From NCBI RefSeq assembly GCF_000002075.1, contig NW_004797935.1:286929-350928 (forward strand): a stretch of 64,000 bases of DNA, written 5' to 3'. The stretch is from Aplysia californica (lineage: Eukaryota). The position numbers were made by a program, and so were the translations under genes. Every line of letters begins with the position of its first letter. The stretch's first letter is position 1. A model generated the notes under the pieces. It saw only the letters and a program-made list of their open reading frames with translations, did no database searches and was not told the DNA's origin. Of this stretch, positions 38,212-64,000 are shown piece after piece.

Positions 38212-41200
38212 TTATCCCCTCACATACTTTGGCTTTGGCGTGGTGGGGCTGTAGGGCTGGAAGAGGTGCAACATCACAGCCTAGGAAAACAGAAAAAGTT
38301 TATTTTTTTCAAGTTTAGTAAAAGGGTTTTTCTTTTTTTTTTAAGTAAAAGTTTTACGGCACTTGCAACACAATAAAGTCGTATGAGTGCCGAAGAATAG
38401 AGATGTTACAAGAGAGTAACATACACAAAAAAGGAGGAGAGATAAGGACGATAGATGTCTGATAGGAAAGAAGGAGCAAACCACACCAGAGCAACCGCCA
38501 ATCACCCACTTAGTTAGAGTTTTATGGCACTTGGAACAAAAATAGGTTATATAAATGCGGAAGATTAGAGGTGCTGCTACAGATTAACATACAAAGGAAA
38601 GAAGGAGGAGAGATTATAATGATAGATGTTTGGTAGGAAACAAGGAGCAAACCACACCAGAGCACCTGCCAACCACCCATACAGAAAATCTATTTTTTTT
38701 TAAAGGGAGAACACAAAGTTTAGTGAAAAACTTACACATTGGTCCGGACTAAAGAAAAACAAAAAAAAAACACAATATATATATATATTTTAGCAGCAGT
38801 TCTGGGTAGTAATAGATAGTTCTAAAATAAGCAAACAAACAAGAACTTACCTTCTCTCTAAAAAGTGGAATCATGTTGTCATGGTTAAAAAAACACACAC
38901 AAAAACTGAAGGCAGCTACAAGTACAAGCACCCAGAAAATTACATACATACTTACACACATGCAATGACTAGTGGAGGGGAAAGGGGGGGGGGATGTGGG
39001 AGGGGGCAGGGANNNNNNNNNNNNNNNNNNNNNNNNNNNNNNNNNNNNNNNNNNNNNNNNNNNNNNNNNNNNNNNNNNNNNNNNNNNNNNNNNNNNNNNN
39101 NNNNNNNNNNNNNNNNNNNNNNNNNNNNNNNNNNNNNNNNNNNNNNNNNNNNNNNNNNNNNNNNNNNNNNNNNNNNNNNNNNNNNNNNNNNNNNNNNNNN
39201 NNNNNNNNNNNNNNNNNNNNNNNNNNNNNNNNNNNNNNNNNNNNNNNNNNNNNNNNNNNNNNATTGTGATCCACAGCCTGTTCTCGGCGGCCCTCCAAAC
39301 CAATGACTCCTGGCCGTAGTAAATGTCGTCCGTGACTTCGTGGGGCCGGCGTGGCAGACTGTGCAGGAACACCCACTCTCCACCCGCTTCCTTCATCATC
39401 TGATGAAAATGGAAAACATAAAATTTTATAGCTGCCAACTATTCAAAAACAAAAAGAAAAAAACCATACTCTACCCCCAAAGCGGGTTAAAATGGTGGGC
39501 ATAGGCCAACTAACCCGCATCCAAACTCAAAAAATTTTTCTGCATTTAATAAATTCAAGCTATTCAAAGTAGACCTGCTACAAAAGATCTCTCCAAGTGA
39601 CTTACGGGCTTTGTTCTCATCATTATTGGCAAATCCATCTTGAAAGTTTGTAATTTTTCTACAGTATTAGACCATTAAGAGTAATACTAGAAAAACAGAG
39701 AATACATATTTTTTTACACCAAAAAAAACAGATTTTCGTATTAGACTCTTACAAAGTCTATAAATATATTAACTTCACAACTGGAGAATGGAAGCACAGT
39801 TTTTCATGTTTTGTTGTAAATCAGATTCCCAGCAATCTACTATTGAAATTTGAATGTTCAAAACTTTAAAACATTTTAAACTCTCCATGGCATTTCCATT
39901 AATTTTACTGACTTCCCCAATTAATTATCAGTTACTAAATACAATGCAGCATAAAAAACAAACAGTTGATAGGGAATAACCCCCCCCCCACACACACACA
40001 CACACAAAAACAACAACAACAACAACAATTTTAAAAACAAGATGTTCCGTCCAACCTTTCTATTCACTCCAAATCCAGCAAAATCTTTAATTCTTTTCTT
40101 GATGTTTTCATCGTCTGCTCCTGGTTTTGTCCACGAGTCTGCGATGATGGCATCAGCCCGGTACACAGCTTGCAACGGATCATTACCGATGAGGAAAGAC
40201 GCCCCAGTCTACAACAAAAGACCAGACAACATTTGTTTTACTTCTTTCAGCAGGAAAAAAAAGTTAAATCTCTTGCCAAGCAAAGCTTGAGAATTAAAAC
40301 AAAAGAGCATAAATAAAAAATAATCAATGGATTGTTCTTGCCACTTACTCGCTTATACAATCTCAAAGAGCAGTGTGAATTAGCTGAACAAGCAACAGGG
40401 GACATAACAATGGATCAGCAGAACATGGTAACAGGGGACATAACAATGGATCAGCAGAACAGGGTAACAGGGGACATAACAGTGTGGATCAGCAGAACAG
40501 GGTAACAGGGGACATAACAGCGTGAATCAGCAGAAAAGGGTAACAGGGGACATAACAGTGTGGATCAGCAGAACAGGGTAACAGGGGACATAACAGAATA
40601 TCTAAATACCAGTTGTTGTTTGGTGTGGGTTTTTTTTTGGGGGGGGGGGGGGTGGTAAGTGTTTTACGGCGCTCGCAACTGCATAAGGTCATATGAGTGA
40701 GCGGGACACACCTAACATTTTCAGATGGTAGGAAATTAAAAATTTTGCCCGGGTGACGGCCAAAGAGTCAGGAGCCCAGAGGAGGGAGCAAAGGAGGTGG
40801 GGGGGAGGGGGGGGGCAGAAAGTGGAGACAACAGCAGACGACAGAATATTGCTAGATTGCTGGAAAGGAGGTGAAAGGAGACAATTTTAGAGAAAAAATT
40901 GTTCCGTCGCTACCTGTATTCGAGTCCGGGACCTTTGAATAAGAGGCGAACACCTTAACCTCTAGGTCACAAGAGCCCCCATACCAGTTTTAACATCAGG
41001 AGAACAGAGTTCTGTTTAACTGACATCTATAAGCAGGCACACAGATTATGAGACAGTCTGAATTCATGATATCTGCTTGTACTAATTTGTGCTGTATAAA
41101 TGTATTGCACAAACTGTGCACTCCTTTTCCAAAATGTTTATTTGATTTGACTAGAATGAAAAAAGGTAGTGAAAATAATTACCAGTCTTCATTCAGAATA

Positions 41201-44200
41201 TTGAATTGAGTAAACAATATTTCAAAACATATTTTCTGACGCCTTAAGGGCAATCATGGTAAGCTTTTTGTGAATTTAAGTGTAAAATAAGATGTACTTA
41301 AACATACTTCTGGGATTTTTAAAACTCTTTATTCACCACTGGATATGACATGAACCTAACATCTGCAGATAAATTTCATTCAACATCATTTCTAGCCCGT
41401 GGCTGTAGAACTAACACTGCACGTACCTGCCCTGAGATCTTCATAGCGTCCAGCATAACATCTGTGTCTGGCTCATAGCCCTGAAGAGGAAGCAACCGTC
41501 AAACCCAACAGTATTTGAAACAGTTAAAAATATTCTTCTGAAGCAAAATGGGTAAAAATAAATCTTTGTTCAAACAAGGCTAAATGTATTTCATCAAAGA
41601 TTAGAATGGTCCACAAGTAGAAGTATGTAATTACGATGAAATTTTCAAAGACAGCAACAAAGCCATAGAAAACAACCACATCTCAATAACAGGGTAACAT
41701 TCTTTTGACATCACGGAAAGAAAACTAAAAATTTGAAGAAAGAAAAAAAAGGTGTCAAAAGACAATTTCAACACATTATATAAACCCTAGGCATGCTAGT
41801 TAGTTATATTATAACTGGCTAGCATGCTTAGGGTTTATCAAACAAAGAGACAGAGAGAGTTCATGCCCACTTACACACTGTTTGGGCATGCTTGGGTGAG
41901 CAAGTTGTGCATTATTGAATGTGTATCATAGTACATGAAAGTAAGTAGTGTATTTCTGTGTTGATGCTGAATCTTTGTATGTTGATATTCCTTGAATATA
42001 TCCATTCAAAATTTCCTCTCTGGGTCCATAAAGTTTATTTTACCTCATCGTATCTTATTTTATCTTATCTTAACTTACCTTACCTTATCGTATCTTACCT
42101 GATCTAACCTTATAAGCTGTTTGATTCCCCTAAACAGTGTCAGACTCACCACTGGTGTGGCTGTATTGAGGTCAATGCCTAACCTAGCACAGCCGTACAA
42201 CAGAGAGTTGAGGACGCTGTTTCCGTCTCCGATCCAGGCAATCTTGAGGCCTCGCAAATAGCCAAAGTATTCCTGTACGAAAATAAGCACACAATACCCA
42301 TACGATAAGGAAACTGAATTGTGCAACAGTTAAGTATATGGACAACTGTGTAAATCACTGAATACACAACAGCATCAAGTAGAACAGTCAGGATACATAT
42401 GCTCATTTATTGATAACAAAAGAGGTGGAAAGAGGAAAAAGGACAGGNNNNNNNNNNNNNNNNNNNNNNNNNNNNNNNNNNNNNNNNNNNNNNNNNNNNN
42501 NNNNNNNNNNNNNNNNNNNNNNNNNNNNNNNNNNNNNNNNNNNNNNNNNNNNNNNNNNNNNNNNNNNNNNNNNNNNNNNNNNNNNNNNNNNNNNNNNNNN
42601 NNNNNNNNNNNNNNNNNNNNNNNNNGAGCTTGGGGTGTGGGTGTGTGTGTGTGTCTGTGTATGCAAAGGGGGGGGGGGGATGATGAACTATTATATCCTA
42701 CTTCTGAATTTACTAAATGTAGGTGTATGCACAATATTCAGGTAATCAGCACTGCCTTGGCCTTTTACGGGACGTTCACACCCTAGCCCTACAAGATACC
42801 AGGTGAGCTATCAGCGCCAAGTACCATAATAAAATCAGTAATAATAGATCGCATTTGTATAGCGCAAATCCCCGCTCAACAGCAAGCTCTAAGCGCTTCA
42901 CAATCTATACTATTACCCCAGCAGACCTGAGAGCATTCTGAAACAAACTCAACTTCCTGGGAAGCATACAGTACAAGCAGCCATTTATAGGCGCTTAAAC
43001 ACTAACATACTGACAAGATCTTTCGCCGTCTATGGCTTGGTACCCATTCCCACCTGGGAGAAGTGAAGACAGTTCGTGTAAAGGGCCTTCCCCAAGGACA
43101 CAACGTCGGGCCCGCAGCTTGAACCCCTGAACCCGCAACCTCACAATTACAAGTCCGGTAGCCTAACCACTAGGCCACCGACGCCACAGTAATAAGAATC
43201 TATTAAGCTGCAGCTTTTCTAAAATTTGTGACCGAGTTATAAGATTGTTTGAGATTAGTGGGGTTCTATCGGGGCTTTGTGAATGTTTCAAGCTTAGGTT
43301 TGTCGCAGTTTCTATCTGCAAACCACACATGGTGATCCAAGTCTCATTCTGAAATGAATATTCCGCTCTGAGAAAAATACACATTAACACACACACAAAA
43401 TTCTATCTGTTTTTGCTTTTAAAACTCACCATCTTAGATGTAAAACATCTCAAATGTACCTAAAATGTAGACAGAACCCTTTAATCTCATACATCAATAT
43501 TGTACTGTCAAGCAGGTGCATTGGGAAAGCTACTTTGTCTGCTAGTTTCTTTTTCTTTCTACAAATCCTCCTTTCTGAAAACAGTTTTTTCTTTGTACCT
43601 CTCATTGCTACTCTGCAGAGCGTGAAGTAAACAAGAATTTTTTTCAGCTTTCCTTTGCTATAAACTGGCTCATACCAAAGTGAAGTTGAAAATGCAATAT
43701 AGAATAGGCCCTACAAGGAAAAAAAAGTTGGACAAAAACTTTAACTTTAAGAAAAAATACGAGAAAAAAATACTACTCATCCCTCAATACTTTTAAATAA
43801 ACAAGGACAGGAAAATCTAAGTATTTAAGAGTAAAATGCAAGTATATAAGAAGCTGCAAATCTGAATACTCTCCATTTAATTATAAAGGGAGATATCGTA
43901 TCAGCATCAGCAGATGCACATAGTTCATATATAAGTAAAAACAGAGGAATAGCAACAAACACAACATGTTAGAGATTCTCTCATTTTTACCTGCAGCGTG
44001 ACAAAATAGGCCAAGACCTGCAGAGGCTGAAGCAGGTCAGACATTCCAGTGACCACAGGCACCGTTGACTCATTGGCAACTTCTTCCAGAACTTCCTGTT
44101 TTCCCGCACCGACGATGATGAGATCAGCAGCCCCGGCCAGCAACCTGGACAATCATACACACACATGTTTGTTCATTATTTACAACAAAAAAAATTTGTT

Positions 44201-47200
44201 AATGTGGGTGTTTTTACGCCCCTATTTGTCCCCGCGTTTTTTTGCAAAAAAAAATCTGAAACTATACAAACTGAGCAGAAAAAATGTGAAATTATGCGAT
44301 TCTGTTAATTTTAACAAAGAAAGATAAAGGAAAATCATCAGAAATTATGCAAAAAGTGATCAGATTTTGCTAAACTATGCGGAGTGCATAAAACCCCGGG
44401 AACAGCCCTATCAATACAATGTAGATCATATAGGAGGCAGACTCTGACCCTGCCTGTCAGAGCCAACCTAGGCTGAGAGGGAAACAACACCCTGGCAGAA
44501 ATACTGAGACACTTGACGAAATTCTCCCCACTCAGGAACCAAACGTGGGTCTCCTGTATGCTTGAACGAAGTGCCTAACCCCTACACCACAGTTGCCGGT
44601 TGATATAGACTTGTTTAAGAGAAAGTAAGAGGAGGGGAAAATTAGGCAGGGCAAGGGCACGGGAAAATCCCCCCCCCCCCCCCTTTATTTATGAGATGTG
44701 CTATGACACAATTGAATTTTCATTCAATGTTAAAATAAAGGGTCAAAACAATTATTTTTGTGAACAGGAAATATGTAAAAGGTAAATATTGATATAATAA
44801 TATATAAAGACATTCTAATTCCTTAAACTATTAAAAGGCTTGTAACCTCGACGATGAGTCAGAAAAATCAGACATAATGTAAAACACATTAACTGATTAT
44901 AATCTAAATATGCTTAGACATACATTGATCAATACTGAAAACAAAATATGAACTCTTTTTTTTCACAAACATAAACAAAGTATATCAGCCATAGAGACAA
45001 TACCTCCTTATTCAGTGCAGTGTATTCTGATTCAGAGCTTCTTTCTGCTTCTTCCTTTTCAGTCACAAAATTCAGAGCAATAGCCAGCAAAAATTTCAAG
45101 TAGAAAAAGATAAATAAACAGGGTGGAACATCACCATTCTACACTAACTTACCTTGCAGAATCTTTCCAGTTTTCCTTCCCATCAAGGTGAAGGTCACTG
45201 GCGTTGAAGTAAGCCGCCTGGCCACCAAGTCTCGCCAGACCTGAGCCACAAAAATTATCTCATTCACAATACTGAGCTTGTTTCCTTACTATACAGAAAA
45301 CTGAACTCAACTTTATTATTTCTTTTCCTTAATCTGAAAAGGCTCCAAAAGAAGCTCTCAGTTCAAAACAAAATTTTTAAAATTTGTGGATGAGAAGCAG
45401 TGACATGAGGAATCAATGCTTGACTACTGACTCTATGAAGTTGGAAATGTATGAAACAATTTCATTTTCATACAGGATTTTTTTTAAAATCAAAAGGGTA
45501 TATCAGCACCAAGATTGCTCCCAACATTGCATCATTTGACACAGCTTCTGCTCTTTCTAAATATTGGTAGCCAACAGGTAGACCCCACACAACTATTTCT
45601 TTTATTTAAAAAAAAAAAAAAACGAAGAGGAAAAAACTGACCAATCTGATATTCTTCAAAACAATTCAAATACTTTTAAAAAACCCAAGGGTATATTTAC
45701 CAATGTATACTCGAGCCTCGTTTCGGACACGGATTTTTTTCACACACACACACACACGCAAAAAATCCAGACAATAGAACAGCAATATTCACCTAGCTCA
45801 GCATTAAGCCGAGAAGCTGTATCATCCTTTTCAAAAACTAGCGCTGCAGTTTTGCCAGTTAGTGGCTGAAGCACCTAAGAACAAAAAAATACAGATAGTT
45901 TGAGCAGTATGAAAATCATCATTAAGCTGTCCCCGTCATTTTATGCAAGAAAAATTCTGAGATTATGCAAACTGAGCCCAAAAATGTAAAAATATCGATT
46001 CTGTTAATTTTAACAAAGATTGATAAAGGAAAATAATCAGAAATTATGCAAAAAATGATCAAATTTTGCTAAATTATGCAGGGTGCTTAAAACACAGGGA
46101 CAGATTAAGATTTCTTTTCACCACGGCCATAAAAGATTTCTTTTCACCATGACCATAAAATGCACTAAGTTTACGTACGACAGCCCACCTTCCCCACCCC
46201 CCCAGAAATAAGTGAATAAGTGTGGTAGTGAGCTCAAATAGAGAAAGGTAGACGCTGATATGAAATAAAAGATGTTGTTGTTATCGGTCAAGAAGAAATA
46301 AAAGAAATAAAAGATAAATGAAGGGCACCATATTGTTGCTAAAGTGTTCACATAAGAAAAGGATTCAAGAGCATACAAGAAGATATCACGGAATCAAGTG
46401 TATCTACAAAGCAAAAAAATATGTTTATACCTCTCCATTATCTTTTATTCTGGTTTTCAGATCCTTTGCTGTCCACAAAAACTGATGAATCTCATCTTTT
46501 CCGAAATGCTTCAGGCTGAGAAAGTCACGGCCCACCAGGAATCTGAACAGACAGACCAATTTGATAAATTTACGAGTCAACCTCACAAAGTTAGCTTTAA
46601 AAAATTGCACCAACGTGAATTTTAGACAATCAGGTTTTTTTCTTTTAATTCTAGCTTAAATACAATATACAGTGGGAACTTTTTACTATTCTCCATGTTG
46701 AGAAAATAATCAGATACAAAATATTAAAACTTCTTTTAAACTTTTAAAACTTCTCAGCTGGGGGTGCTATGCTCTTTAAGAAAAACAAAATGTTTTTTTT
46801 CCCACAGATTATTCAGTCCTCTTAATTAGACCTGTGCCCATTCGATTTCATTATTTGACATTCATGATTTTTTAACTATTCACAGCTATTCGAAGCGTGG
46901 CAGAGCCAATCGAATGCTGTGTGATTTTTTTCCGCAATGAATTTCTTCTAATTTTTCTCAACCCGTAGTAAAATTAAAGCATAATCAAATATCTAAATAC
47001 ACTGCTGTAAATTCGACGTTATGTTCTGATTGATGATTACGGGACAGAGCGATAAGAGGAGCCAGTAGGAGTTATAAAATGTGCCTCTAAAAAGCACTCA
47101 TGATGCACTCAATAGACTGTCACTTCAAAGTGCAGCCGGAGATTTTGTATACATTGCATAGCCTACTGAGCTCCTTTTGCACAATTCGATATTCGAAGTA

Positions 47201-53200: not shown

Positions 53201-53521
53201 TGGACTCGAGTCCGAATAACGACGGCCTTGTTTATAATGACAAAAATCCACCAAGTTTGAGAGCTTTCACATACTCAGAAAGCACATTTCACGATGTACA
53301 CATTTGAAATACGAATGGCAAATGTTTTGGTCAAGGTATACTCACGCATCAATATTACTGGAACTTGTGGAACTTGACGCCGAATCACTTTGACTTTCTC
53401 GAGCAGGCGGGGGGTCATTTTGGCTTGACTTAGAACTGGCTCTCGCGCTAGTTCTTAGCAGCAGTTTATGTGAACAGGAGGCTGAAGGCGCCTTCAAAAG
53501 AACTCGATGTAAAAAATTCAT
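38212..53521 (-). CDS. OTC: ornithine carbamoyltransferase-like protein, probably mitochondrial, catalytic motifs degenerate (candidate pseudoenzyme), 11 exons, ~429 aa
   Basis: Exons: 53521-53346, 49296-49156, 46542-46431, 45874-45793, 45240-45153, 44144-43991, 42272-42150, 41480-41427, 40208-40056, 39399-~39262 (donor in gap), 38280-38212. Fold motifs GRDFLSL, FEK, LGG, WIGDGN, GYEPD, FLH.LPR..EV, AENR.W, C-terminal YSP..PKPK. Internal exon sizes 82/88/154/123/54 nt equal those recalled for human OTC. The symbol denotes family, not demonstrated activity. Confidence 0.9.
40394..40595. repeat. 36-38-bp minisatellite, ~5.5 copies
   Basis: AACAGGGGACATAACA..TGGATCAGCAGAACAGGGT repeated. Confidence 0.95.
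40657..40980 (-). mobile_element. tRNA-derived SINE, family B (second copy)
   Basis: Head and tail match 33202-33707 in reverse complement. Confidence 0.85.
42838..43187 (-). mobile_element. tRNA-derived SINE, family A
   Basis: Colinear with 28988-29342; A-box TGGCCTAGTGG, GTGTCCTTGGGAAG, AATGGGTACC. Confidence 0.85.
44412..44597 (-). mobile_element. tRNA-derived SINE, family C
   Basis: Reverse complement aligns with 19157-19350. Confidence 0.7.
46827..48838. mobile_element. ~2-kb non-autonomous hAT-like element
   Basis: TAGACCTGTGC ... GCACAGCATTA termini; 8-bp TSD CTCTTAAT/CTCTTAAG; TTCGAA motifs; five internal TGGGTACCCAC..CCGCTT repeats at 47208-47512. Confidence 0.75.
51608..52157. 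mobile_element. element built of ATTCTCACCC/GGGTGAGAAT palindromes
   Basis: About 8 full or half palindromes in two arms around a GC-rich core; TTAGGACACAAC direct repeat at 51612 and 52146. Confidence 0.65.
52278..53222. mobile_element. fold-back element with TATTCGGACTCGAGTCCGAATA palindromes
   Basis: Left arm ~52278-52321 is the reverse complement of ~53110-53152; two more palindrome units to ~53220; CpG-rich core. Confidence 0.75.
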
Positions 53522-54191
53522 TTCAATTAATCTCCAGAATCTACCAGCTGGTGCAACAAAAACTAAGTCCAAGAATAAACCAGATCCAAACAAACGCCGG
53601 CCTAACGGTCGTTGGGCATCTTCCGAAGCGAAAGTTCAGATTCCTACTTCTACCGGATGTTTTGATTCTGAATCTCAAAATAGTCTGCGGAAATTCCCGA
53701 TTTTCTCGTCGATCGATATAGCCTAATACAGTAATTCAGCTTAATCGATAGACCCGTTGCACCATGTTTTGAAACTGTGAAGAACAAAATTAGGACCTTG
53801 AAGGTCTGTCTAATAATACCAGAGTATTTATAAACTCGCTAATAATACTTTATGACGTTGTTTGAACCCGTGGTGCAATCTTCGCGCTGGTTGAGTATAA
53901 AACGAACTGTTTTGCTTAGTAACGTTCAGAGAAAAATGTGATCGGAGTGGAAAACGCTCCGTGAGCGTGACTTGTTGAAAATAATATTATTGATATGTGA
54001 AGCTTGGTGCCTGTGAGTACCACATTTTCAAGTCCAAAGCAAAGAAAAGGACCCCAAGCCGAGACCAAGAGGACCCCTGCGTCTTCAATTTGTCAAGTCA
54101 AAAGCCTTTATAAAGAAAGCACTTTGCGCCCTCGCCTCAACAGCGCGTGTGTGTGCCATATCTGACCGCCTCAGTTCGTGACTTTTTCTGA
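53522..54191. promoter_or_regulatory. putative bidirectional promoter and 5' UTRs; TATA box at 54109-54114 on +
   Basis: 670 bp between divergent ATGs; CpG-retaining and free of recognisable repeats; TATAAAG ~80 bp upstream of the eEF2-like ATG. Confidence 0.6.
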
Positions 54192-57100
54192 ATGGTATGG
54201 GATATTATTATGACTATGGATGTACCAATGAATTAAACAAACATTTTAAAGAACCTAGATGAATACATTAATTAATTCTGGGGAAACATTGATCCCATAG
54301 CTGACCTACTTGTTCTCGTACCAACAGGTTGAGTTTTCCATGATAAATTTTTGTAGAAACTGAATTTTTATTTTATCTGTGCAAAAAATGCCAGTCAACT
54401 CTCCAGTCTCTAGTCTGGCTTTGCCACAGAAAAATTCATCAGAAGTCGGAGTTTTCCATATACGTGTGCTTTCATTTTAGAACCATTGAAATAAACTTCA
54501 AATGTCTATTCACTTTTAAATATATATCACATGCACACTGCTGCACCAGTGATGTCTTTAAAACTAAAACTGATTTTACAGAGGTTACTTGTGCTTGTGC
54601 AATCCTTAAATTCTGTAATTTGTTTCTGCAATGTGCACATATAATGATGTACAGAAAAGTAAGAAGGCATAGCTAGGGGAAAGGGGAAATTTTAATCGAA
54701 GTGGCTAGCCGTACTTAAGTACTGCTAGACTAGCCGTACTTAGATCTAGGTTTGGCCCAATCGACTCAAGCCTGTTAAGTACACAGGTCTCATTAGATCT
54801 AGATCTAGTAATTATTCAGGTTCAAATACATGCAAGTCAGTAAGGCACCTTTTGGTTTTGTCTGAAATACAAATACTTTAGGCATTGCAAACTAAAAATT
54901 CCATTTACAATTCAGCCATCAATATTAAGTACGGCTAGCCTGACAGTCTAGCCGTCCTTAAGTACGGCTAGCCTGGCTGTCTACCCGTACTTAAGTACGG
55001 CTAGACTGGCAGTCTAGCCGTACTTAAGTACGGCTAGACTGCTAGTCTAGCCGTACTTATCTTAGGCCCTATTAACATTAGAAAACAGGAGGTTTAAAAT
55101 ACATGCACTGTCATTAAGGCACCTGGTTTTGTCTCAAATTCAAATACTTTAGGTACTTCACACTAAAAATGTATATTTACAATTCAGTAGGCCTATTTTT
55201 TGTAAATGGTCAGTCTAGCCATCATATTAAGAATAAGTACGGCTAGACTGTGAGTCTAGCCGTACTTAAGTACGGCTAGACTGCCAGTCTAGCCGTCATT
55301 AAGTACGGCTAGCCTCTTCCAATTTTAATTAAAGTGTTGTCCGTTCCGTAGCATATATACTAATGCAGGGGGAGAAAGACAGTGATGATGAAAAGTGACT
55401 TATGTAATGCAAGATAATATATCCTACCAAAAAAAAATCGATGCAATGATAGAGCCATTCTTCATATTTTCTTTCTTTTTTTTAGGGGGGGGGAGGGGAT
55501 GTTAGAGGAAGGTTGCAGCTAACATAAAAAGAGTAAAGAATGACTTGAGCTGTCATTGCATAGAATTTTTAATTAAGGCATTATCTCTGCGTTATGTGTG
55601 TCACTTTTCATTGAATGACCCATTTTTCCTATTCTGCAGAGGAATAGAATCTTAATTAAAAAGTTATGAACATATAGATGTACAAATTCTTTTATCAAGA
55701 AAATTCATGTGATAATCCTCTGAATTTACAGACATTTGCTGTCACATACAGATTTTTAAGTTGTCATATAATATATGTAATGTTCTACGATTAAAATTTT
55801 CCTGTTCTTGTCTTTATTGTCCACTCAGGTTCAATTAAGTGTCGAACAACTTCAACATGCACTGCGAAAGCGCAAGAATATCCGCAACATTGCTGTTATT
55901 GCCCATGTTGACCATGGAAAGACTACTCTTACTGATTCCTTGCTTGCGAGGGCTGGTGTGATCGCATCCTCACAGGCAGGTGATAAGAGGGCCACTGATA
56001 CTCTCAAATATGAACAAGAAAAAGGCATCACCATCAAGTCGACGTGAGTTGCCGTTTTCTCTTTTACAAAAGTGATGATGATAATTGTCTTTGAGATGGC
56101 AATTTTAAAAGTGTATTTCAATATTGGGTGCGGTTTTTACTATCTTTAGATGATTTCTGTCCTCGAGAATGCAATGTGTTTTTTTTATATGATTGGTTTT
56201 TCTTCTTTGAGAAATTCATAATCGTTTATTTTTTACTTCTTTATTATTTGCCTTTAGCTTAAATGTTATTTGACTGAAGCTGCTCATACCATTCGAGCTA
56301 TTGTCTGATTGTTGTTTCAATTTGGCTATCAGTACTTGCCATCTTTACTTGGTTATTGTACTAAAAAGGCATGTTTGTTTTAAATTTGTGGTTGTAAATT
56401 CTCCTTCTGACAGCGCTATTTTCAAATATATCAAAATATACATTTGTCTTTCTTTCAGCGCTATTTCCTTGTATCTCAGATTACCCATTTTTCTTTCTGA
56501 CAGCGCTATATCCTTGTATCTCAAATCACCCATTTTTCTTTCTGACGGGGCTATATCCTTGTATCTCAAATCACCCATTTTTCTTTCTGACAGGGCTATA
56601 TCCTTGTACTACAACTTGGAAGACAAGGATGTTGAGCAACTGGGGTCTGAAGGAACGGGTTTCCTGATCAACCTGGTGGACAGCCCTGGCCATGTAGACT
56701 TCTCCCCTGAGGTGACAGCCGCCCTGAGGGTGGTCGATGGAGCCATGGTGGTGGTGGACTGTGTCAGTGGTAAGTTACGTGTTGGTGGTCCAGTGGTTAG
56801 ACTTCACTCTCGACTGGAAGGTCGTGGGTTTGAATTCCATCAGGAGCGCAACGTTTTGCGTTTTGGAAAAGCATTTTACATGAATTTTCCAAATTCACCC
56901 TTTTGGGATTGGGTACCTGGCTATAGGCAATAAAAGATTTGGTCAGTTTGTTAGTACTTTAGCGCATGTAATTTGCAGCTTGGTCTATATGCTTTCTGTG
57001 AGGCCAAAAATGTTTCTTAGTTTTGTTCTTGTCTACTCAGGTAACTGTAGTTGTAAGGCACCTAAAGCATGCTGTAGAGCATAGATAGGAGCTATAAAAA

Positions 57101-60100
57101 TGCGAAATTATCATTAATTATTATTAACTCAGTTGATTTCGCTTTTTGAACATTTTTTTCCTGATTGAAACTCTTCAGCCTTTAGAGTTATACCACTGGG
57201 TAAAAGTAAAGTTACCACCAACTCTTAATAGAGATTTTATTGTGTTCTAAAAGGCTATGTGTGGTCTGCCATTCTATAAGGCTGTGAATGCTGGACTGTA
57301 TTGAAAAATATAAGGCAAGGGAAGCAGTGGCGTTTTGTGATGATCTTACACAGAGTGACTATGTCATCACTTCAACTACATTGTATTTCCCCTTTTATTT
57401 TTGCGTGTGTGTGTAGGCGTGAGCGTCCAGACAGAGACGGTGCTGCGACAAGCGCTGTCGGAGAGGATCAAGCCTGTGCTCATGATGAACAAGCTGGACA
57501 GGGCTGTGTTCGAGAAGGCTCTCACCGCGGAGGAAATCTACTGCACTCTCCGAGACGTTGTGGGCAGCGTCAATGCCCTCATCGGCATATACTGCGAGGA
57601 CGACTCACCCATGGGAGATTTGATGGTAAGTATACAAAGATTTATTATTTTTATATTTTGTTGTTGTTGTTTGTTTTAAATTAGAACAAAAGTTACGGAT
57701 CATTTTTGTAGTCTTTTGTTTGTGAAGAAACAAGATGTAACATTTTTTTTTTTTTGGTTGGATTATTAAGACTTTCAGCCAGAAACATGTGCTTCTGACG
57801 AATTCTATTTTGATCAGGTAGTTTTGTTGTATAGTTTGTTTTATTGTGCTCATAGCACCTGGTCTTATCGTGAGAAGGAAAGTTGTTATATCTTTGAATT
57901 CTGGGCAATGGAATAGACGGTGGAACGCTGTGTCATAAAGGTGGAAATATTGTTGGGAACATGTGGCTTAGGAGAAAATAATTTATTAATTAAACAGGCC
58001 AATTTTTCCTTGTCTGCTTTTCTTTATACGGCCTGTTATTGTTTTCATTCGGGAAATTTACAAACTGAATAAATCTGAGTAAATTTTTTCGCATTTTAAA
58101 AATCCTGTACAACTCTTCCGAATGTTAAAAACCTCTCCGGCATTGTTCCAGATGGATCCAGCCAAGGGCAATGTGAGCTTCGGCTCTGGCCTTCATGGCT
58201 GGGGTTTCAACCTCAAGCAGTTTGCTCGTCTGTACTCGAGCAAGTTCGGCATCAAGGAAGAACGTCTGATGAGAAGGCTCTGGGGGGAGCATTACTTCAG
58301 CCCGGCCTCACGTCAATGGAGCAAGCAGCCCGGAGAGGGACGTGTCAGGGGCTTCAACCACTTTGTCCTTGACCCTCTCCTCAAAGTGAGCAACGTTCTT
58401 TCAATGGGCTACCTATGAACAAATATTAATTATATCTTGGTTACTATCGTTGTTATTTTTCTTTGTACTTGGCTTTATGTTAAGTGCCAAGAGCTGTGTG
58501 CACACGAGAATAGGCACAGTAAAAATGATCCACATTATTATTATTAAAATTGATATTAAGATTGTATCAGATCCGAAACACAAGATTAGATGAAGAGTGT
58601 TGCTTATCTTTTTCGATTTCTCTCAGAACCCAGTTCAGGGTTGCTACTTTTCTGGAAATTTTGGAGATTCTAGATGTGGATTTTCTCCTCCAGATCCCAA
58701 TGCCTGCGTTCTGTGGAAAAAACATAAAATTTATATACCGGTATGTATNNNNNNNNNNNNNNNNNNNNNNNNNNNNNNNNNNNNNNNNNNNNNNNNNNNN
58801 NNNNNNNNNNNNNNNNNNNNNNNNNNNNNNNNNNNNNNNNNNNNNNNNNNNNNNNNNNNNNNNNNNNNNNNNNNNNNNNNNNNNNNNNNNNNNNNNNNNN
58901 NNNNNNNNNNNNNNNNNNNNNNNNNNNNNNNNNNNNNNNNNNNNNNNNNNNNNNNNNNNNNNNNNNNNNNNNNNNNNNNNNNNNNNNNNNNNNNNNNNNN
59001 NNNNNNNNNNNNNNNNNNNNNNNNNNNNNNNNNNNNNNNNNNNNNNNNNNNNNNNNNNNNNNNNNNNNNNNNNNNNNNNNNNNNNNNNNNNNNNNNNNNN
59101 NNNNNNNNNNNNNNNNNNNNNNNNNNNNNNNNNNNNNNNNNNNNNNNNNNNNNNNNNNNNNNNNNNNNNNNNNNNNNNNNNNNNNNNNNNNNNNNNNNNN
59201 NNNNNNNNNNNNNNNNNNNNNNNNNNNNNNNNNNNNNNNNNNNNNNNNNNNNNNNNNNNNNNNNNNNNNNNNNNNNNNNNNNNNNNNNNNNNNNNNNNNN
59301 NNNNNNNNNNNNNNNNNNNNNNNNNNNNNNNNNNNNNNNNNNNNNNNNNNNNNNNNNNNNNNNNNNNNNNNNNNNNNNNNNNNNNNNNNNNNNNNNNNNN
59401 NNNNNNNNNNNNNNNNNNNNNNNNNNNNNNNNNNNNNNNNNNNNNNNNNNNNNNNNNNNNNNNNNNNNNNNNNNNNNNNNNNNNNNNNNNNNNNNNNNNN
59501 NNNNNNNNNNNNNNNNNNNNNNNNNNNNNNNNNNNNNNNNNNNNNNNNNNNNNNNNNNNNNNNNNNNNNNNNNNNNNNNNNNNNNNNNNNNNNNNNNNNN
59601 NNNNNNNNNNNNNNNNNNNNNNNNNNNNNNNNNNNNNNNNNCCCCCCCCTTTGATTCTAGTGTATCCCAGAGTTCCAAGCCTGTTATGAAAGAAAAAGTG
59701 AGTCTATCCTTTTTTTTTAAGTCAAACTCACTCGAGACAAAACCGTTGCTTTGAAATTCAGGCTAAAATGAAAGGACAGCTTGAAACTCTTGTTGATTTG
59801 AAACAGTTGATAGAAAAACAGTGAGCAAAACACACCATGGATTTTCGATGATCGTTGAAATTTGGACTCAACCCCTGATTCAAGGATCATCAAAATTGAA
59901 ATTGAAAGACTTATCCTCCTGCAACCCCCACCCCCTTCCCTATATAAACAACATGTGGATGGACCAGTAAAAGGAAATGTTTTATGTCACCAGCAATGAA
60001 GGAGTGTGACCCCAATGGACCTCTCATGATGTACGTAGCAAAGATGATCCCGGCCGCGGAGAAGGGTCGGTTCTACGCCGTTGGCCGTGTGTTCTCTGGC

Positions 60101-60194
60101 ACCGTTTCTCCGGGACAAAAAGTGAGGATTATGGGCCCTGATTATGTTCCAAATGCAGTGAAAAAGCGAGACCTGTATGTCAAGAATGTACCCA

Positions 60195-60225
<31 letters not shown>

Positions 60226-63200
60226 GTAACAAATAGCATTTATGCTGCACATTTCCATTTTCTATTTTAAAAATGCTCTATGTGCATTACATTCATGAAA
60301 CAGGTACTTCAGTGAACTGTTTTGTCTAAAGTAAGACTAAAAGTAGTTGTTTTTTTGTGTGTTTTTTGTTTTTTTCATTAATAATGATTTATTATTTGGT
60401 ATTTTTCCTCATATCTTGACAATTAATTTTGAGTCAGATATGCTCATTTTGTGTATATTTTGTTAGAGGTGCTGATTCATGGTGGTTGTGGAAGGGAAAA
60501 GAGCCATGAAAGATTCATATTTTGTCGTGGCAATGATTTCAGGATTACAATTTTTTTGTTGTGAGTGTGTCCAGTATAGAGAAGTATTCTGTTTGTTGCT
60601 CAGCTCTTGCACCCTACCCCTATCACAAACACACACTGAAGGCTATTTAAAAGAAAGGAAAGAGGTGTATGAAATCTTGATAATATTAAAAAGCATTTTT
60701 CAAAACTGTGAGCTAAATTCTGTCCATTCTTCTATGAATATGAATCGATAACAACATTATGAATATGAACCTGTGGAGCCAGGTACATTGCAGATTATTC
60801 TAAAAAGTATCTGTGCAATGTGAGGGGAAGAATAGATGTTTGATAATACAATTTTTCTAATGTTTTCATTTCCATATAAAAGTTTGAGGTCATATTGTGT
60901 ACCTACTAGTTGTCATTGGCATGCTGATTTTCCCCCACAGAACGGTTCTCATGATGGGTGGCCAGGTACAGTCTGTTGATAACGCCCCATGTGGCAACAT
61001 CATTGGGCTGGTTGGTGTGGACAGGTACCTGCAGAAGACGGGAACCATCACGACTTTTGAGGAAGCACACAACCTGAAGGTGAGCTCAACTTTGCAATTG
61101 TCTCGGTCATAACACACTTGCTGTAGTTATTTTGTTATTGTTGTTGTTGCTGTTTTGTTTTGAGAAAACTTTAAAAAGAACCGTGTGCTGTGTAAGTCAG
61201 CCTTTTGACTTGAGCAATAGTGATCATATCTCAATAATTGGATTTTTAGTATACTAAACGAAACTCAGCCATGTTGAGGTTATGAAACAAGTATATAACA
61301 AGCATTTCTACTGGACTAGTGACTAGAAGCCTGAAAAAGCCTGAGGCAGTTATGACACTGAGGAAATTTAGCAAATGAATCAGAATCTATACCCTTAAAC
61401 TTAATAAATTGTACCCTCTCAGCACTATAGTGCAGAACGTGATGGAAGTTTTTTTTTTTGTAATCAAGGGCTTTACATAAATGGGAGTAATAGCTATTGC
61501 AAACCTGATTTTTTTTTTTTTTTCTAAATGTATGTGTTTTACACCCCTTCAACTCAATGTAGATCATATAGGATTAGGAGGCACGCTTCGACCCTGCTTG
61601 CCACTAAACCATTGTTGTAAAGTGTAATGAGCATGCTGTAGAGCGAGGAAATACGCTATATAAATGCAATTATTATTAGTATCATTAAACCGCAGAGGCC
61701 ACATTTACAGTTTTTGCTTCTGCCACCAGGTGATGCGGTTCTCGGTGAGTCCCGTGATGCGTGTGGCAGTGGACGTCGTCCATCCCCAGGACTTGCCCAA
61801 GCTGGTAGAGGGTCTGAGGCGACTCAACAAGGCCGAACCCCTCGTACAGGTCGGTACTCACACCAGACACGTGTCTGACTCACTGTAAAGGTGTGGATGG
61901 TCGATATCAAACCGGATAGACCATAGATACCATAAAAAATAATACAGGACACAGAACAACCAACACACCATGTTCATTAGCCGCCACACGCCCAGTGCAG
62001 TTTCCTTTATTGAAGAGCTCTCCTCAAGCATGAACAGTAGAATAGTTTCCCTTGTAGGGCACACAACATGGTTGCACCAAAATATTATGGTCCAAAATAT
62101 AATACTGTTACACTCACTGACTGTCAGGGGCTGTAATCCCAATGTAACCCCGACTGCCTGCATGTCGACAATGGTGTTTTTAACAATTTTATTGTCTGAT
62201 AACTATTCAAAGTAGACACTTATAATTTTCACTATCTATTATTTTTATATTGTGTTTTAAACACAAATGAAAACAGGTTTTCAGTAGATGTCGTACCTTT
62301 GTTTGCATGATTATTTGAAACACAAAAATTTTGGTCTTTGTTGTTTAGGATTTATTTTTCTTTTTTCTGTTCCGTCCAAAATATATATTATGTTGTATCA
62401 GTTCATAAACTTCCTTCCTTTCTTTGGGTCACATTTTGATTCGTTATGATTATTTCACTTTTTTGTGGGTGGTCGGAGGGCACCACTTGTCGTATTAATT
62501 CTTTTCTTTCCCTTTGTTGTTTCTGGGTATCTGTCTTGCTTTTTCCCTGCACTCTATGACAGTAATTGTGTCGATGTGCCTTTCTTTACTCAAAGTGTAT
62601 TTCACCTAGAGGGTGGTTGGCGAGTGCTCTTGTGTGGTTTGCTTCTTCTTTCCCATCGAACATCTATTATCTTTATCTCCCCACCTTATTTTTTGTGTTT
62701 GTTACTCTCTTGTAACCCCTCTAACCTTTGGCAGTTCTATGACCGTATTGTGTTGCAAGTGCTGTAAAACTAAAACTTCATTAAAATTTCACCTTTTTGA
62801 TGAAAATATATGTTTTTCCTCTCTGTACGTGTGTGTTTGTGTTTAGTGCACCAGCGAGGAGGGTCAGCACATTGTGGCGGGGGCCGGAGAGCTGCACCTG
62901 GACATTTGCCTGAAGGACCTGGAGGAGGAGTACGCCGGTGTGCCCATCAAGGTATGGACGCTGGGACTACTTTGCAGTAACCCTTCTCGCGATTTTTTAC
63001 TTTTTGTAAAGTCTTGCTGGATGAATTTGCAAAGCCAACTGTGTGATGTTTTGCTTGAGTTTTGCTAATGCTATACATATTTTTGGTAATACAGTATAAC
63101 ACGGGGATACCAGACAAAAATATTCCAAATCTTGATTCAGTCATTCAGAAGTAACATTAGCGAAAAAATGGCCTCCAAAGTTTGTTGACCTCCATAGCTT

Positions 63201-63587
63201 AAGAGTCCTTGAAAACTGTAAATTTACATTTTTTGTGACTTTATCTACAATTTTTTATAAAATCCACCCTAAAATATGTTTTTAATAGGTGATAAAAGAT
63301 GCTGATCTGAAAAAAGAAAATTGGGAAGAAAGTACCCAACGTCCAGGAAAATGCCTGTTTCTTTGATTTGGTCATTTTGACGAACGCCTAGCCTGATTTC
63401 ACCTGGCTGCCTCACATATCACCGGTGTTCTATTTGTCGACAGAGGTCGGAGCCCGTGGTGAAGTTTTGTGAGACGGTGATTCAGGAGTCTGACCGCGTC
63501 TGTCTGGCCAAGTCAAGCAACAAGCTGAACAGAGTGTTCATGACAGCCGAGCCGCTGCCAGACGGACTCAGCGAAGAGATTGAAAAT
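54192..63587 (+). CDS. EEF2: eukaryotic elongation factor 2-like protein (divergent paralogue), partial: continues beyond the window, and one or more exons are presumed in gap 58749-59641
   Basis: Exons: 54192-54194 (ATG only, then gtatgg), 55829-56043, 56594-56769, 57417-57625, 58152-58385, [gap], 59994-60195, 60941-61079, 61730-61849, 62847-62951, 63444-63587. Motifs [107 protein letters not shown]. Confidence 0.93.
54697..55320. mobile_element. MULE/fold-back-like MITE, 9-bp TSD
   Basis: CGAAGTGGCTAGCCGTACTTAA ... TTAAGTACGGCTAGCCTCTTCC (20/22); AATTTTAAT at 54688-54696 and 55321-55329; internal arrays of TAGCCGTACTTAAGTACGGCTA. Confidence 0.85.
56400..56608 (+). repeat. 45-bp tandem repeat spanning the intron 2/exon 3 acceptor of the eEF2-like gene
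   Basis: TTTCTGACAG|.GCTAT junction units ending at 56413, 56458, 56503, 56548 (AG>GG) and 56593. Confidence 0.92.
56781..57126 (+). mobile_element. tRNA-derived SINE, family A (diverged)
   Basis: TGGTCCAGTGG A-box, GGTTTGAATTC B-box, TGGGTACCTGGCTATAGGC, ATT-rich tail. Confidence 0.75.
60197..60224. repeat. (TAA)n microsatellite abutting a splice donor
   Basis: AG|gtaataataa... run. Confidence 0.9.
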
Positions 63588-64000
63588 GTGAGTACTTCTT
63601 AGTTTAGTTTAGTGGGTCAGTACTTTTTATTTTAGTTCAGTAACTTGACCGCCCAGTGATGGCGCACTGGCTCACTGGCGATGCTTATCGCGACCCCAGT
63701 GCTTTCTTGTCGTATCTTCATTTTTTTTACACACTGAAAACAGCTCATAACAATGAATGAGCTTAAGAAGATGTCACATTTTCATAAGAAAGAGTGAGTG
63801 TGTGTGTGTGTGAGGGATGTGGGTTGCTACAGATTACCAATCTCCCACCCCATTTGAAAATCCAGTTAGCAGCAACCTCCGCCTAACAGCAACAAAGGCT
63901 TACTTCTCCAGAGGGTTGCTGTAACTTTAAGGCAGACAGGACACCACTGTAGGTTTACTTATTGGGGCTATGACAATGTATATGCTACACCTAACGACAT

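What the first reader, a model, noticed from the sequence alone, without database searches (positions are those of the whole stretch)
54192..63587. Divergent eEF2 paralogue altered at known regulatory and decoding-site positions
Seen versus the normally near-invariant eEF2 (human, recalled): N-terminus MVNFTVDQIR>[10 protein letters not shown]; P-loop GKST>GKTT; [20 protein letters not shown]>[20 protein letters not shown] (T56 kept but its context and the switch-I Arg changed, T53>K); DFSSEV>[13 protein letters not shown]>LVEGLRR (K525, the EEF2KMT/FAM86A methylation site); VSYRETV>VKFCETV; domain IV loop KSPNKHNR>KSSNKLNR. Established: S595-P596 is a CDK site, S595 and H599 support eEF2K phosphorylation of T56, and this loop lies near the decoding centre. 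Inference: a specialised second eEF2 that may escape eEF2K shut-off, or act outside normal translocation (for example ribosome hibernation). The diphthamide His lies beyond the window.
Basis: partly seen in the sequence, partly recalled or inferred. Interest (0 to 1): 0.78.

Follow-up and report, generated by a model that had tools for sequence, protein, structure and literature searches.

The report
Divergent second elongation factor 2 gene
Besides its normal gene for eEF2, the protein that moves ribosomes along mRNA, this animal keeps a second, intact, fast-evolving copy that other animal genomes also carry and that is changed at the tip touching the decoding site and at known regulatory sites; its function is untested.

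Summary
A multi-exon eEF2-like gene runs on the + strand from 54192 past the window end. Fifteen exons are visible, all with GT-AG borders, all in frame, with no stop codon. The stop lies 4183 b beyond the window.

The diphthamide histidine (HRGGGQ) is kept. The N gap hides about 86 residues. The last 9 codons of exon 6 are readable just after the gap, in the right frame and phase.

The genome also has a canonical, human-like eEF2 on another contig. The two share intron positions but only 59% of residues.

Genes of the same type exist in at least four other unnamed assemblies. They form a 100/100 clade. Synonymous sites are saturated while replacement differences are about 0.2, so the gene is old and under purifying selection.

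Changes fixed across the clade include:
- GKST>GKTT in the P-loop.
- Changes at T54, F56 and C67 in switch I.
- Loss of the S-P CDK site.
- A remodelled diphthamide loop.

P580S+H583L, K509R (human K525) and DFSSEV>DFSPEV are limited to a subclade. T56 is kept here.

Most likely this is a differently regulated translocase variant. I could not test expression, eEF2K insensitivity or a hibernation role. No paper describing it was found.

The parts
54192..54194 (+). Exon 1 coding part: the start codon only (ATG|GTATGG). The own canonical gene has the same layout.
   Evidence: inferred, no RNA evidence
55829..56043 (+). Exon 2: N-terminus, P-loop (GKTT) and switch I ([23 protein letters not shown]). 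It ends in phase 2 at the same place as the canonical gene.
56594..56769 (+). Exon 3: G3 motif DSPGH and DFSPEV.
57417..57625 (+). Exon 4: G4 motif NKLD.
58152..58385 (+). Exon 5: [16 protein letters not shown] and the G' region. It ends in phase 0.
58749..59641 (.). Assembly gap. It hides the rest of intron 5 and most of exon 6 (about 86 residues, canonical 282-367). I did not fill it.
59644..59671 (+). Visible 3' end of exon 6 (PPFDSSVSQ plus 1 nt), followed by a GT donor at the position homologous to the canonical gene and to orthologues (weak donor GTTCCA).
   Evidence: the choice of donor is inferred
59994..60195 (+). Exon 7: start of domain II, with a phase-1 acceptor.
60941..61079 (+). 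Exon 8: domain II. The intron after it is absent from the own canonical gene.
61730..61849 (+). Exon 9: [16 protein letters not shown] (human K525 position is R). Weak donor GTCGGT.
62847..62951 (+). Exon 10: domain III. The intron after it is absent from the canonical gene.
63444..63587 (+). Exon 11: first tip loop of domain IV, with VKFCETV and KSSNKLNR.
63588..64000 (+). Intron 11. The gene continues beyond the window. In L004 (window coordinate minus 64000): exon 12 at 567-767, exon 13 at 1176-1358 (IHPDPAHRGGGQ), exon 14 at 2488-2620, exon 15 at 3990-4183 with stop TGA.

Best explanation
This is a genuine, intact second eEF2 gene. It arose by an old DNA-level duplication of eEF2, and it is kept by selection here and in other animal genomes.

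It encodes a five-domain translational GTPase of normal eEF2 length. I think it most likely still binds the ribosomal factor site, hydrolyses GTP and promotes translocation. This is inferred from what it keeps:
- G1-G4 motifs.
- S579 and K582.
- H694 and D696.
- The diphthamide His in HRGGGQ.

It is built differently at two places.
1. The domain IV tip. The stacking pair P580/H583 that shapes the first tip loop is replaced by S/L. The residues flanking the diphthamide His are replaced in every member of the clade.
2. The regulatory surface. The S-P CDK priming site is lost. The sequence around T56 is changed, including the +3 Arg. The K509 (human K525) methylation site is R.

My best reading is a differently regulated elongation factor with changed coupling to the decoding centre, used in some tissue, stage or condition alongside the canonical factor. 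That it is a selected eEF2 paralogue is shown (about 0.9). The mechanism is inferred (about 0.35).
For: Gene integrity:
- 15 visible exons, all GT-AG, in frame, with no stop over 2259 nt of coding sequence.
- Exon GC is 57% and GC3 64-72%, against 35% GC in introns.

Second copy:
- A canonical eEF2 lies on C693.
- The two are 59% identical.
- Intron positions and phases are shared, with two extra introns in the divergent copy, so it is not a retrocopy.

Conservation elsewhere:
- Exon-2 and exon-13 fragments of the same type reach 67-86% identity.
- Whole loci L016/L017 and L018, and the N-terminal half in L019, are of this type.
- Against L016, pN is 0.195 and pS 0.795. Against L018, pN is 0.243 and pS 0.741.
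- The clade has 100/100 support and sits next to the canonical animal clade.
- Of 436 columns invariant in canonical genes, 251 are kept in all clade members and 64 are changed in all.

Motif table.

Published meaning of the positions:
- P580 and H583 stack to shape the loop; K582, H694 and diphthamide H699 make contacts (PMC4861600).
- In yeast, all S579 substitutions were lethal; most P580 substitutions are viable but alter -1 frameshifting and GTPase activity; R66 contacts the sarcin-ricin loop (PMC9830224).
- S595 phosphorylation by CDK1/2 promotes T56 phosphorylation (PMC11660736).
- K525 is methylated by FAM86A (PMC10285254).

The genome holds an eEF2K-like gene.
Against: - There is no RNA evidence for this gene.
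- About 86 residues lie in the gap.
- Three donors are weak (GTTCCA, GTCGGT, GTACTT).
- T56 and T58 are kept, so eEF2K may still act on it.
- Several of the changes (RATDT, GITI) also occur in ordinary fungal eEF2.
- P580 changes are tolerated in yeast, so part of the divergence may be neutral.
- The age of the duplication relative to other animals is unresolved (AU p 0.107).
- The organisms behind the related loci are unnamed.
Confidence: 0.6

Rival explanations
1. It is a plain isoform. The gene is a working translocase whose only special feature is where or when it is expressed, as with eEF1A1 and eEF1A2. The residue changes are tolerated drift and carry no regulatory or mechanistic meaning.
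For: - All catalytic and contact residues are kept.
- P580 substitutions are mostly viable in yeast.
- RATDT and GITI occur in a normal fungal eEF2.
- Many of the stressed changes are limited to a subclade.
Against: - 64 columns invariant in canonical genes are changed in every clade member. They cluster in switch I and around the diphthamide His.
- The clade's branch is about 2.5 times longer than the canonical one, yet pN is far below pS.
- This pattern suits a shifted constraint better than plain drift.
Confidence: 0.25
2. It is a non-translocating ribosome binder. The protein occupies the factor site of idle 80S ribosomes (hibernation or storage), or does another job, rather than driving elongation.
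For: - eEF2 is found on idle ribosomes together with SERBP1-type proteins (discussed in PMC4861600; PDB entries 7oya and 7oyc appear).
- The domain IV tip that unlocks the decoding centre is the most coherently changed part.
Against: - The GTPase motifs, catalytic His, S579, K582, H694, D696 and the diphthamide His are all kept under selection. A passive plug would not need them.
- There are no expression data linking the gene to eggs or dormancy.
Confidence: 0.1
3. It is a decaying duplicate, a pseudogene, in this species. It looks intact only because the lesion lies in the gap or is recent.
For: - About 86 residues are unread.
- Three donors are weak.
- There is no RNA evidence.
Against: - 753 codons are open.
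- The terminal branch of this gene is short (0.14, against 0.30 for L016).
- Exon GC3 is far above the intron background.
- All acceptors and donors keep AG and GT.
Confidence: 0.04
4. It is the genome's EFL1/Ria1 or Snu114/EFTUD2 orthologue, mistaken for eEF2.
For: GKTT and GWGF are states that I recall in EFL1 (from memory only). A faint Pfam EFL1 hit appears on exon 12 (24 bits, below the cut-off).
Against: - The best PDB matches of the exons are eEF2 (E about 1e-21), against EFL1 at 3.5e-13 and Snu114 weaker.
- It has normal eEF2 length, with no long insert and no N-terminal extension.
- HRGGGQ is present.
- It groups with animal eEF2 in the tree.
Confidence: 0.01

Closest known systems
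Canonical eukaryotic elongation factor 2 (eEF2/EEF2; the own-genome copy on contig C693)
   Same: - Five domains and about 840 residues.
- G motifs, S579, K582, H694, D696 and the diphthamide His.
- The same intron positions and phases, including the exon that holds only ATG.
   Different: - Only 59% identical.
- 64 canonical-invariant columns are changed across the clade: S33T, T54K, F56A, C67G, R564, and V691, T692, L693, A695, A697, I698.
- P580 is also changed in all three clade loci that cover it (S, S, N). It falls outside the 64 because one canonical-type row (L021b) has A there.
- The S-P CDK site is lost.
- In this gene and L016, H583L, K509R (human K525) and DFSSEV>DFSPEV also occur.
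- Two extra introns.
- A branch about 2.5 times longer.
EFL1/Ria1 (60S maturation GTPase) and Snu114/EFTUD2 (spliceosome GTPase), the two old eukaryotic eEF2 paralogues (PMC4342817)
   Same: They too are eEF2-derived five-domain GTPases that took on a different job. GKTT in the P-loop is shared with EFL1 (from my memory).
   Different: - EFL1 is about 1100 residues with a long insert and lacks the diphthamide motif.
- Snu114 has an acidic N-terminal extension.
- This gene has neither feature, and it sits inside animal eEF2 in the tree.
EF-2 paralogues of Archaea and parabasalids (PMC6143161)
   Same: They are lineage-restricted second copies of EF-2 with changed domain IV tips.
   Different: According to that paper's abstract, those cases are tied to loss of diphthamide synthesis. 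Here the diphthamide His is kept in all members seen.
eEF1A1/eEF1A2 isoform pair of vertebrates (an analogy only; mentioned in PMC4342817)
   Same: Two genes for one elongation factor that differ in expression and modification.
   Different: From memory, those isoforms are over 90% identical. This pair is 59% identical and differs at ribosome-contact loops.

Membership tests
eEF2 (eukaryotic EF-2) | Domain order GTP_EFTU, D2, EFG_III, EFG_IV, EFG_C in a protein of about 840 residues | tested here: met
   Pfam by exon. 279 + 473 visible residues plus about 86 hidden.
eEF2 (eukaryotic EF-2) | GTPase motifs G1 (AHVDHGK[ST]T), G2 Thr in ITI, G3 DSPGH, G4 NKxD | tested here: met
   [18 protein letters not shown] and NKLD are present.
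eEF2 (eukaryotic EF-2) | Diphthamide-acceptor His in the loop H-x-D-x-x-H-R-G-G-G-Q | tested here: met
   IHPDPAHRGGGQ in exon 13 (L004:1176-1358). The flanking residues are changed. The modification itself cannot be tested here.
eEF2 (eukaryotic EF-2) | First tip loop of domain IV, S579-P580-N-K582-H583 (human S595-P596...H599) | tested here: not met
   The loop reads S-S-N-K-L. S579 and K582 are kept, while the stacking pair P580/H583 is replaced (meaning from PMC4861600).
eEF2 (eukaryotic EF-2) | eEF2K target T56 (and T58) in the context [14 protein letters not shown] | tested here: inconclusive
   T56 and T58 are present. The context reads [14 protein letters not shown]. Phosphorylation cannot be tested here.
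eEF2 (eukaryotic EF-2) | Closer to eEF2 than to EFL1 or Snu114 | tested here: met
   PDB: eEF2 at E 6e-22 against EFL1 at 3.5e-13 for exon 2. In the tree it is sister to animal canonical eEF2.
eEF2 (eukaryotic EF-2) | Ribosome-dependent GTPase and translocase activity | not testable with these tools
   This needs biochemistry or yeast complementation.
EFL1/Ria1 | Length of about 1100 residues with a long insert, and no diphthamide His motif | tested here: not met
   Normal eEF2 length with HRGGGQ present.
Snu114/EFTUD2 | N-terminal acidic extension of about 100 residues before the G domain | tested here: not met
   The protein starts [10 protein letters not shown], 17 residues before the G domain, as in eEF2.

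The most novel reading that the evidence does not exclude
The gene belongs to an undescribed, old subfamily of eEF2 in invertebrate animals. This would be a second cytoplasmic translocase with a remodelled decoding-site tip that is insulated from the CDK-to-eEF2K shut-off. It would let particular cells (for example germ cells, eggs or neurons) keep elongating, or shift reading-frame fidelity, when canonical eEF2 is switched off.
Probability: 0.2. Interest if true: 0.75.

Novelty: new variant of a known kind. Interest (0 to 1): 0.55.

Why it matters
eEF2 is usually treated as a single, almost invariant factor in animals, and its phosphorylation by eEF2K is a main brake on elongation. A second, selected copy that keeps the catalytic core would mean elongation control is not uniform in these animals. 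This copy changes the loop that unlocks the decoding centre, loses the CDK priming motif and alters the T56 context.

Assays that read "eEF2 phosphorylation" could miss part of the factor pool.

The assembly size and contig count (927,310,431 b in 4332 pieces) match what I recall for Aplysia californica AplCal3.0. This is memory only; no tool named the organism. If it is right, the point bears directly on a model system in which eEF2 and eEF2K are used to study synaptic plasticity.

The natural replacement of the P580/H583 pair also offers a ready-made variant for studying reading-frame maintenance.

Tried and rejected
Nothing from those places was sent to any search afterwards. They lie in intron 8, between exons 8 and 9.

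2. Full-length named orthologues.
- The word search only accepts hits of 0.55-1.75 times the query length, so exon queries return exon-sized fragments without names.
- An alignment of one full-length representative plus the exons by reference was badly misaligned by MAFFT and was not used.
- The 50%-identity representative search with exon 5 gave no full-length protein of this type.
- The joined (spliced) protein was never sent to a search or folding tool. For that reason I left out a full-length database search and a structure prediction.

3. The listing of cluster members gave no organism names.

4. The ESM Atlas search with exon 2 returned only generic GTP_EFTU clusters.

5. Literature searches found no paper on a divergent animal eEF2 paralogue. 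The trGTPase survey PMC4342817 lists only eEF2, Ria1 and Snu114 for eukaryotes.

6. Dating the duplication. The free tree puts the clade outside the canonical clade, but the AU test does not reject a later origin (p 0.107).

7. I looked up canonical genes hoping to find one from the same sample as a related locus. None of the three look-ups shared a sample.

8. dS is saturated, so no numerical dN/dS is given.
Full report
WHAT IS THERE

The window is G000:C665:286929-350928 of a 927 Mb assembly in 4332 contigs. On the + strand an eEF2-like gene starts with a one-codon coding exon, ATG|GTATGG at 54192. It continues through these exons:
- Exon 2: 55829-56043.
- Exon 3: 56594-56769.
- Exon 4: 57417-57625.
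- Exon 5: 58152-58385.
- Exon 7: 59994-60195.
- Exon 8: 60941-61079.
- Exon 9: 61730-61849.
- Exon 10: 62847-62951.
- Exon 11: 63444-63587.

I fetched the next 8 kb (L004) and found four more exons at L004:567-767, 1176-1358, 2488-2620 and 3990-4183. The last ends in TGA.

Every border is AG...GT, the phases fit, and there is no stop in 2259 nt of visible coding sequence. Exon by exon, Pfam gives GTP_EFTU, D2, EFG_III, EFG_IV and EFG_C. The best solved-structure matches are eEF2 chains.

THE GAP

Exon 5 ends in phase 0 at 58385. The 363 b up to the gap hold nothing eEF2-like. Right after the gap, 59644-59671 reads PPFDSSVSQ plus one base, followed by GT.

In the own canonical gene and in two orthologous loci, the exon before exon 7 ends with GPFDDECCV, GPLDDEASL and GPLDDPAAT plus one base. 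So this is the tail of exon 6, in the right order, strand, frame and phase for the phase-1 acceptor of exon 7.

The donor at the homologous place is weak (GTTCCA). Which GT is actually used cannot be told without RNA.

The gap therefore hides part of intron 5 and most of exon 6, about 86 residues (canonical 282-367). In the closest orthologue, exon 6 is a single exon of 86 codons. That would fit inside the estimated gap.

THE CANONICAL GENE

Searches of the whole assembly with Pfam EFG_IV, exon 2 and exon 15 find exactly two loci. The second lies on C693 (about 333167-354198, minus strand). It encodes an 842-residue protein of standard type, with GKST, [60 protein letters not shown] and DAIHRGGGQ.

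The two genes share their intron positions and phases, including the exon that holds only ATG. The divergent gene has two further introns, so it is a DNA-level duplicate and not a retrocopy. Over 747 aligned residues the two are 59% identical. The divergence is spread over all domains.

IT IS A FAMILY, NOT A ONE-OFF

An exon-5 search of 1.8 billion cluster representatives gave single-exon fragments at 62-72% identity that share GNV[AS][12 protein letters not shown]. The own canonical copy is only 54% identical in this exon.

An exon-2 search gave about 25 fragments at 68-86% identity. All have [25 protein letters not shown] and the same exon end. One of them (P0178) comes from a marine metatranscriptome and is spliced onto exon 3. 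A gene of this type is therefore transcribed somewhere in nature.

An exon-13 search gave IH[PS]DPAH[RC]GG[GS]Q types at 67-79% identity.

Fetching contigs gave these loci:
- Whole orthologous genes: L016 and L017 (the same sample, 71% identical to this gene) and L018.
- Partial genes: L019, L015 and L012.

The assemblies are unnamed long-read ENA assemblies and Logan assemblies. The organisms are unknown.

SELECTION

Against L016, pN is 0.195 and pS 0.795. Against L018, pN is 0.243 and pS 0.741. Synonymous sites are saturated and replacement sites are not, so the lineages are old and the protein has been under purifying selection.

The exons have 57% GC and 64-72% GC3 within introns of 35% GC. 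The terminal branch of this gene is short (0.14). Nothing suggests decay in this species.

PHYLOGENY

I built a careful IQ-TREE tree (LG+C20) from these rows:
- This gene.
- The own canonical gene.
- The three related loci.
- Four canonical-type genes from other unnamed invertebrate-like assemblies: L020, the tandem pair at L021, and L022. These are 70-77% identical to the own canonical gene, and all carry an invariant [23 protein letters not shown].
- Ten more distant representatives.

The second-copy clade has 100/100 support. The canonical clade has 82/96. Both, together with one stray representative, form a 95/98 group.

The free tree places the duplication before the split of those canonical genes. 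However, an AU test does not reject the tree in which the clade is sister to the own canonical gene alone (p 0.107). Long-branch effects are possible. The age is therefore open, beyond being older than the saturated divergences inside the clade.

The joined exon models were used only inside local scripts. They were not sent to any search or folding tool.

WHICH CHANGES MATTER

Of 436 columns invariant in the canonical set, 251 are kept in every clade member and 64 are changed in every one.

The clade-wide changes include:
- S33T in the P-loop.
- T54K, F56A/G and C67G in switch I.
- M162L in G4 (NKMD to NKLD).
- R564.
- A block around the diphthamide His: V691A, T692, L693I, A695P/S, A697P/R and I698A/S. 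H694, D696, H699 and R700 stay.

P580 is changed in all three loci that cover it (S, S, N), so the S-P motif is gone throughout.

These changes occur only in this gene and L016 (DFSPEV also in L015):
- H583L.
- K509R (human K525).
- DFSSEV to DFSPEV.
- S562K.

R66K occurs in this gene, L016 and L019.

T56 and T58 (T57 and T59 counting Met as 1) are kept in all four loci. The +3 Arg is L in three of them. Six exon-2 fragments of the same type have M or L in place of T56. Their clade membership rests on about 70 residues only.

WHAT THE LITERATURE SAYS ABOUT THESE POSITIONS

[quoted passage not shown] P580 and H583 stack to make the sharp turn that presents K582. H694 and the diphthamide on H699 contact the codon-anticodon mimic and displace the decoding bases (PMC4861600).
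- In yeast, all S579 substitutions were lethal. Most P580 substitutions are viable but raise -1 frameshifting and aminoglycoside sensitivity. P580H lowers GTPase activity. R66 lies at the sarcin-ricin loop contact (PMC9830224).
- S595 phosphorylation by CDK1/2 promotes T56 phosphorylation by eEF2K (review PMC11660736).
- K525 is trimethylated by FAM86A (PMC10285254).

The genome has an eEF2K-like gene on contig C55.

The protein therefore keeps the residues that are essential or make contacts. It replaces residues that shape the loops or receive regulatory marks.

INTERPRETATION

Shown: there is a second, intact (apart from the unread gap), selectively maintained eEF2 paralogue with a defined set of clade-wide differences.

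Inferred: it is still a ribosome-dependent GTPase and translocase. Its tip couples differently to the decoding centre. It is not primed by CDK, and eEF2K may handle it differently.

Not tested: expression, tissue, activity and modification.

KNOWN OR NEW

The survey of translational GTPases lists only eEF2, Ria1/EFL1 and Snu114 as eukaryotic EF2-family members in the cytoplasm. It mentions divergent extra eEF2 copies only in some protists (PMC4342817). EF-2 paralogues tied to diphthamide loss are described for Archaea and parabasalids (PMC6143161). I found no paper on a conserved divergent eEF2 paralogue in animals.

Genome annotation pipelines have probably labelled it "elongation factor 2-like". 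I could not check that. I rate it as a new variant of a known kind.

LIMITS

I worked beside those places and sent none of their letters to any search.
- I took no contig to be human.
- No organism names were available. My guess that the assembly is Aplysia californica AplCal3.0 rests on remembered assembly statistics only.

Noticed in passing
window 56405-56608: A tandem array of a 45-nt unit, 4.5 copies at 87% match, lies just upstream of and running into exon 3. Each unit repeats the 3' splice site (CTGACAG) and the first codons of exon 3 (AISLY...). All copies are in frame without stops, so use of an upstream acceptor would add 15-residue units right after switch I.
   Followed up: partly
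window 59672-59702: Just after the exon-6 tail, the frame stays open through SSKPVMKEK and then meets a strong donor (GTGAGT). The letters CCTGTTATGAAAGAA resemble the start of exon 7 (CCAGCAATGAAGGAG). This could be a relic duplication of the junction or an alternative donor. With the exon-7 acceptor it would be out of phase.
   Followed up: no
window 62450-62770; L004:5376-6100; C693 intron between canonical exons 6a and 6b: The same repeat family, with open frames such as ...[16 protein letters not shown]..., sits in introns of both eEF2 genes and downstream of the divergent one. It is probably a common interspersed element of this genome.
   Followed up: no
window 53346-54200 and 38212-46542: Earlier notes of the scan report an OTC-like gene head to head with this gene across a short spacer. 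I did not study the shared promoter region.
   Followed up: no
L021 (ENA ERZ21788738, contig ctg57968l) 6550-10707 and 11744-14950: An unnamed assembly carries two canonical-type eEF2 genes in tandem. The second has long intron-free stretches, an apparent stop in the G3 region (FLIMI*ATSS) and KSANKHNR instead of KSPNKHNR. It may be a decaying or misread copy.
   Followed up: partly
G000 contigs C125, C965, C729, C972: Besides the eEF2K-like gene on C55, the genome holds several further alpha-kinase domain matches in long open frames of 312-516 residues without introns in the matched part.
   Followed up: no
They lie in intron 8 (between exons 8 and 9) and were not examined further.
   Followed up: no
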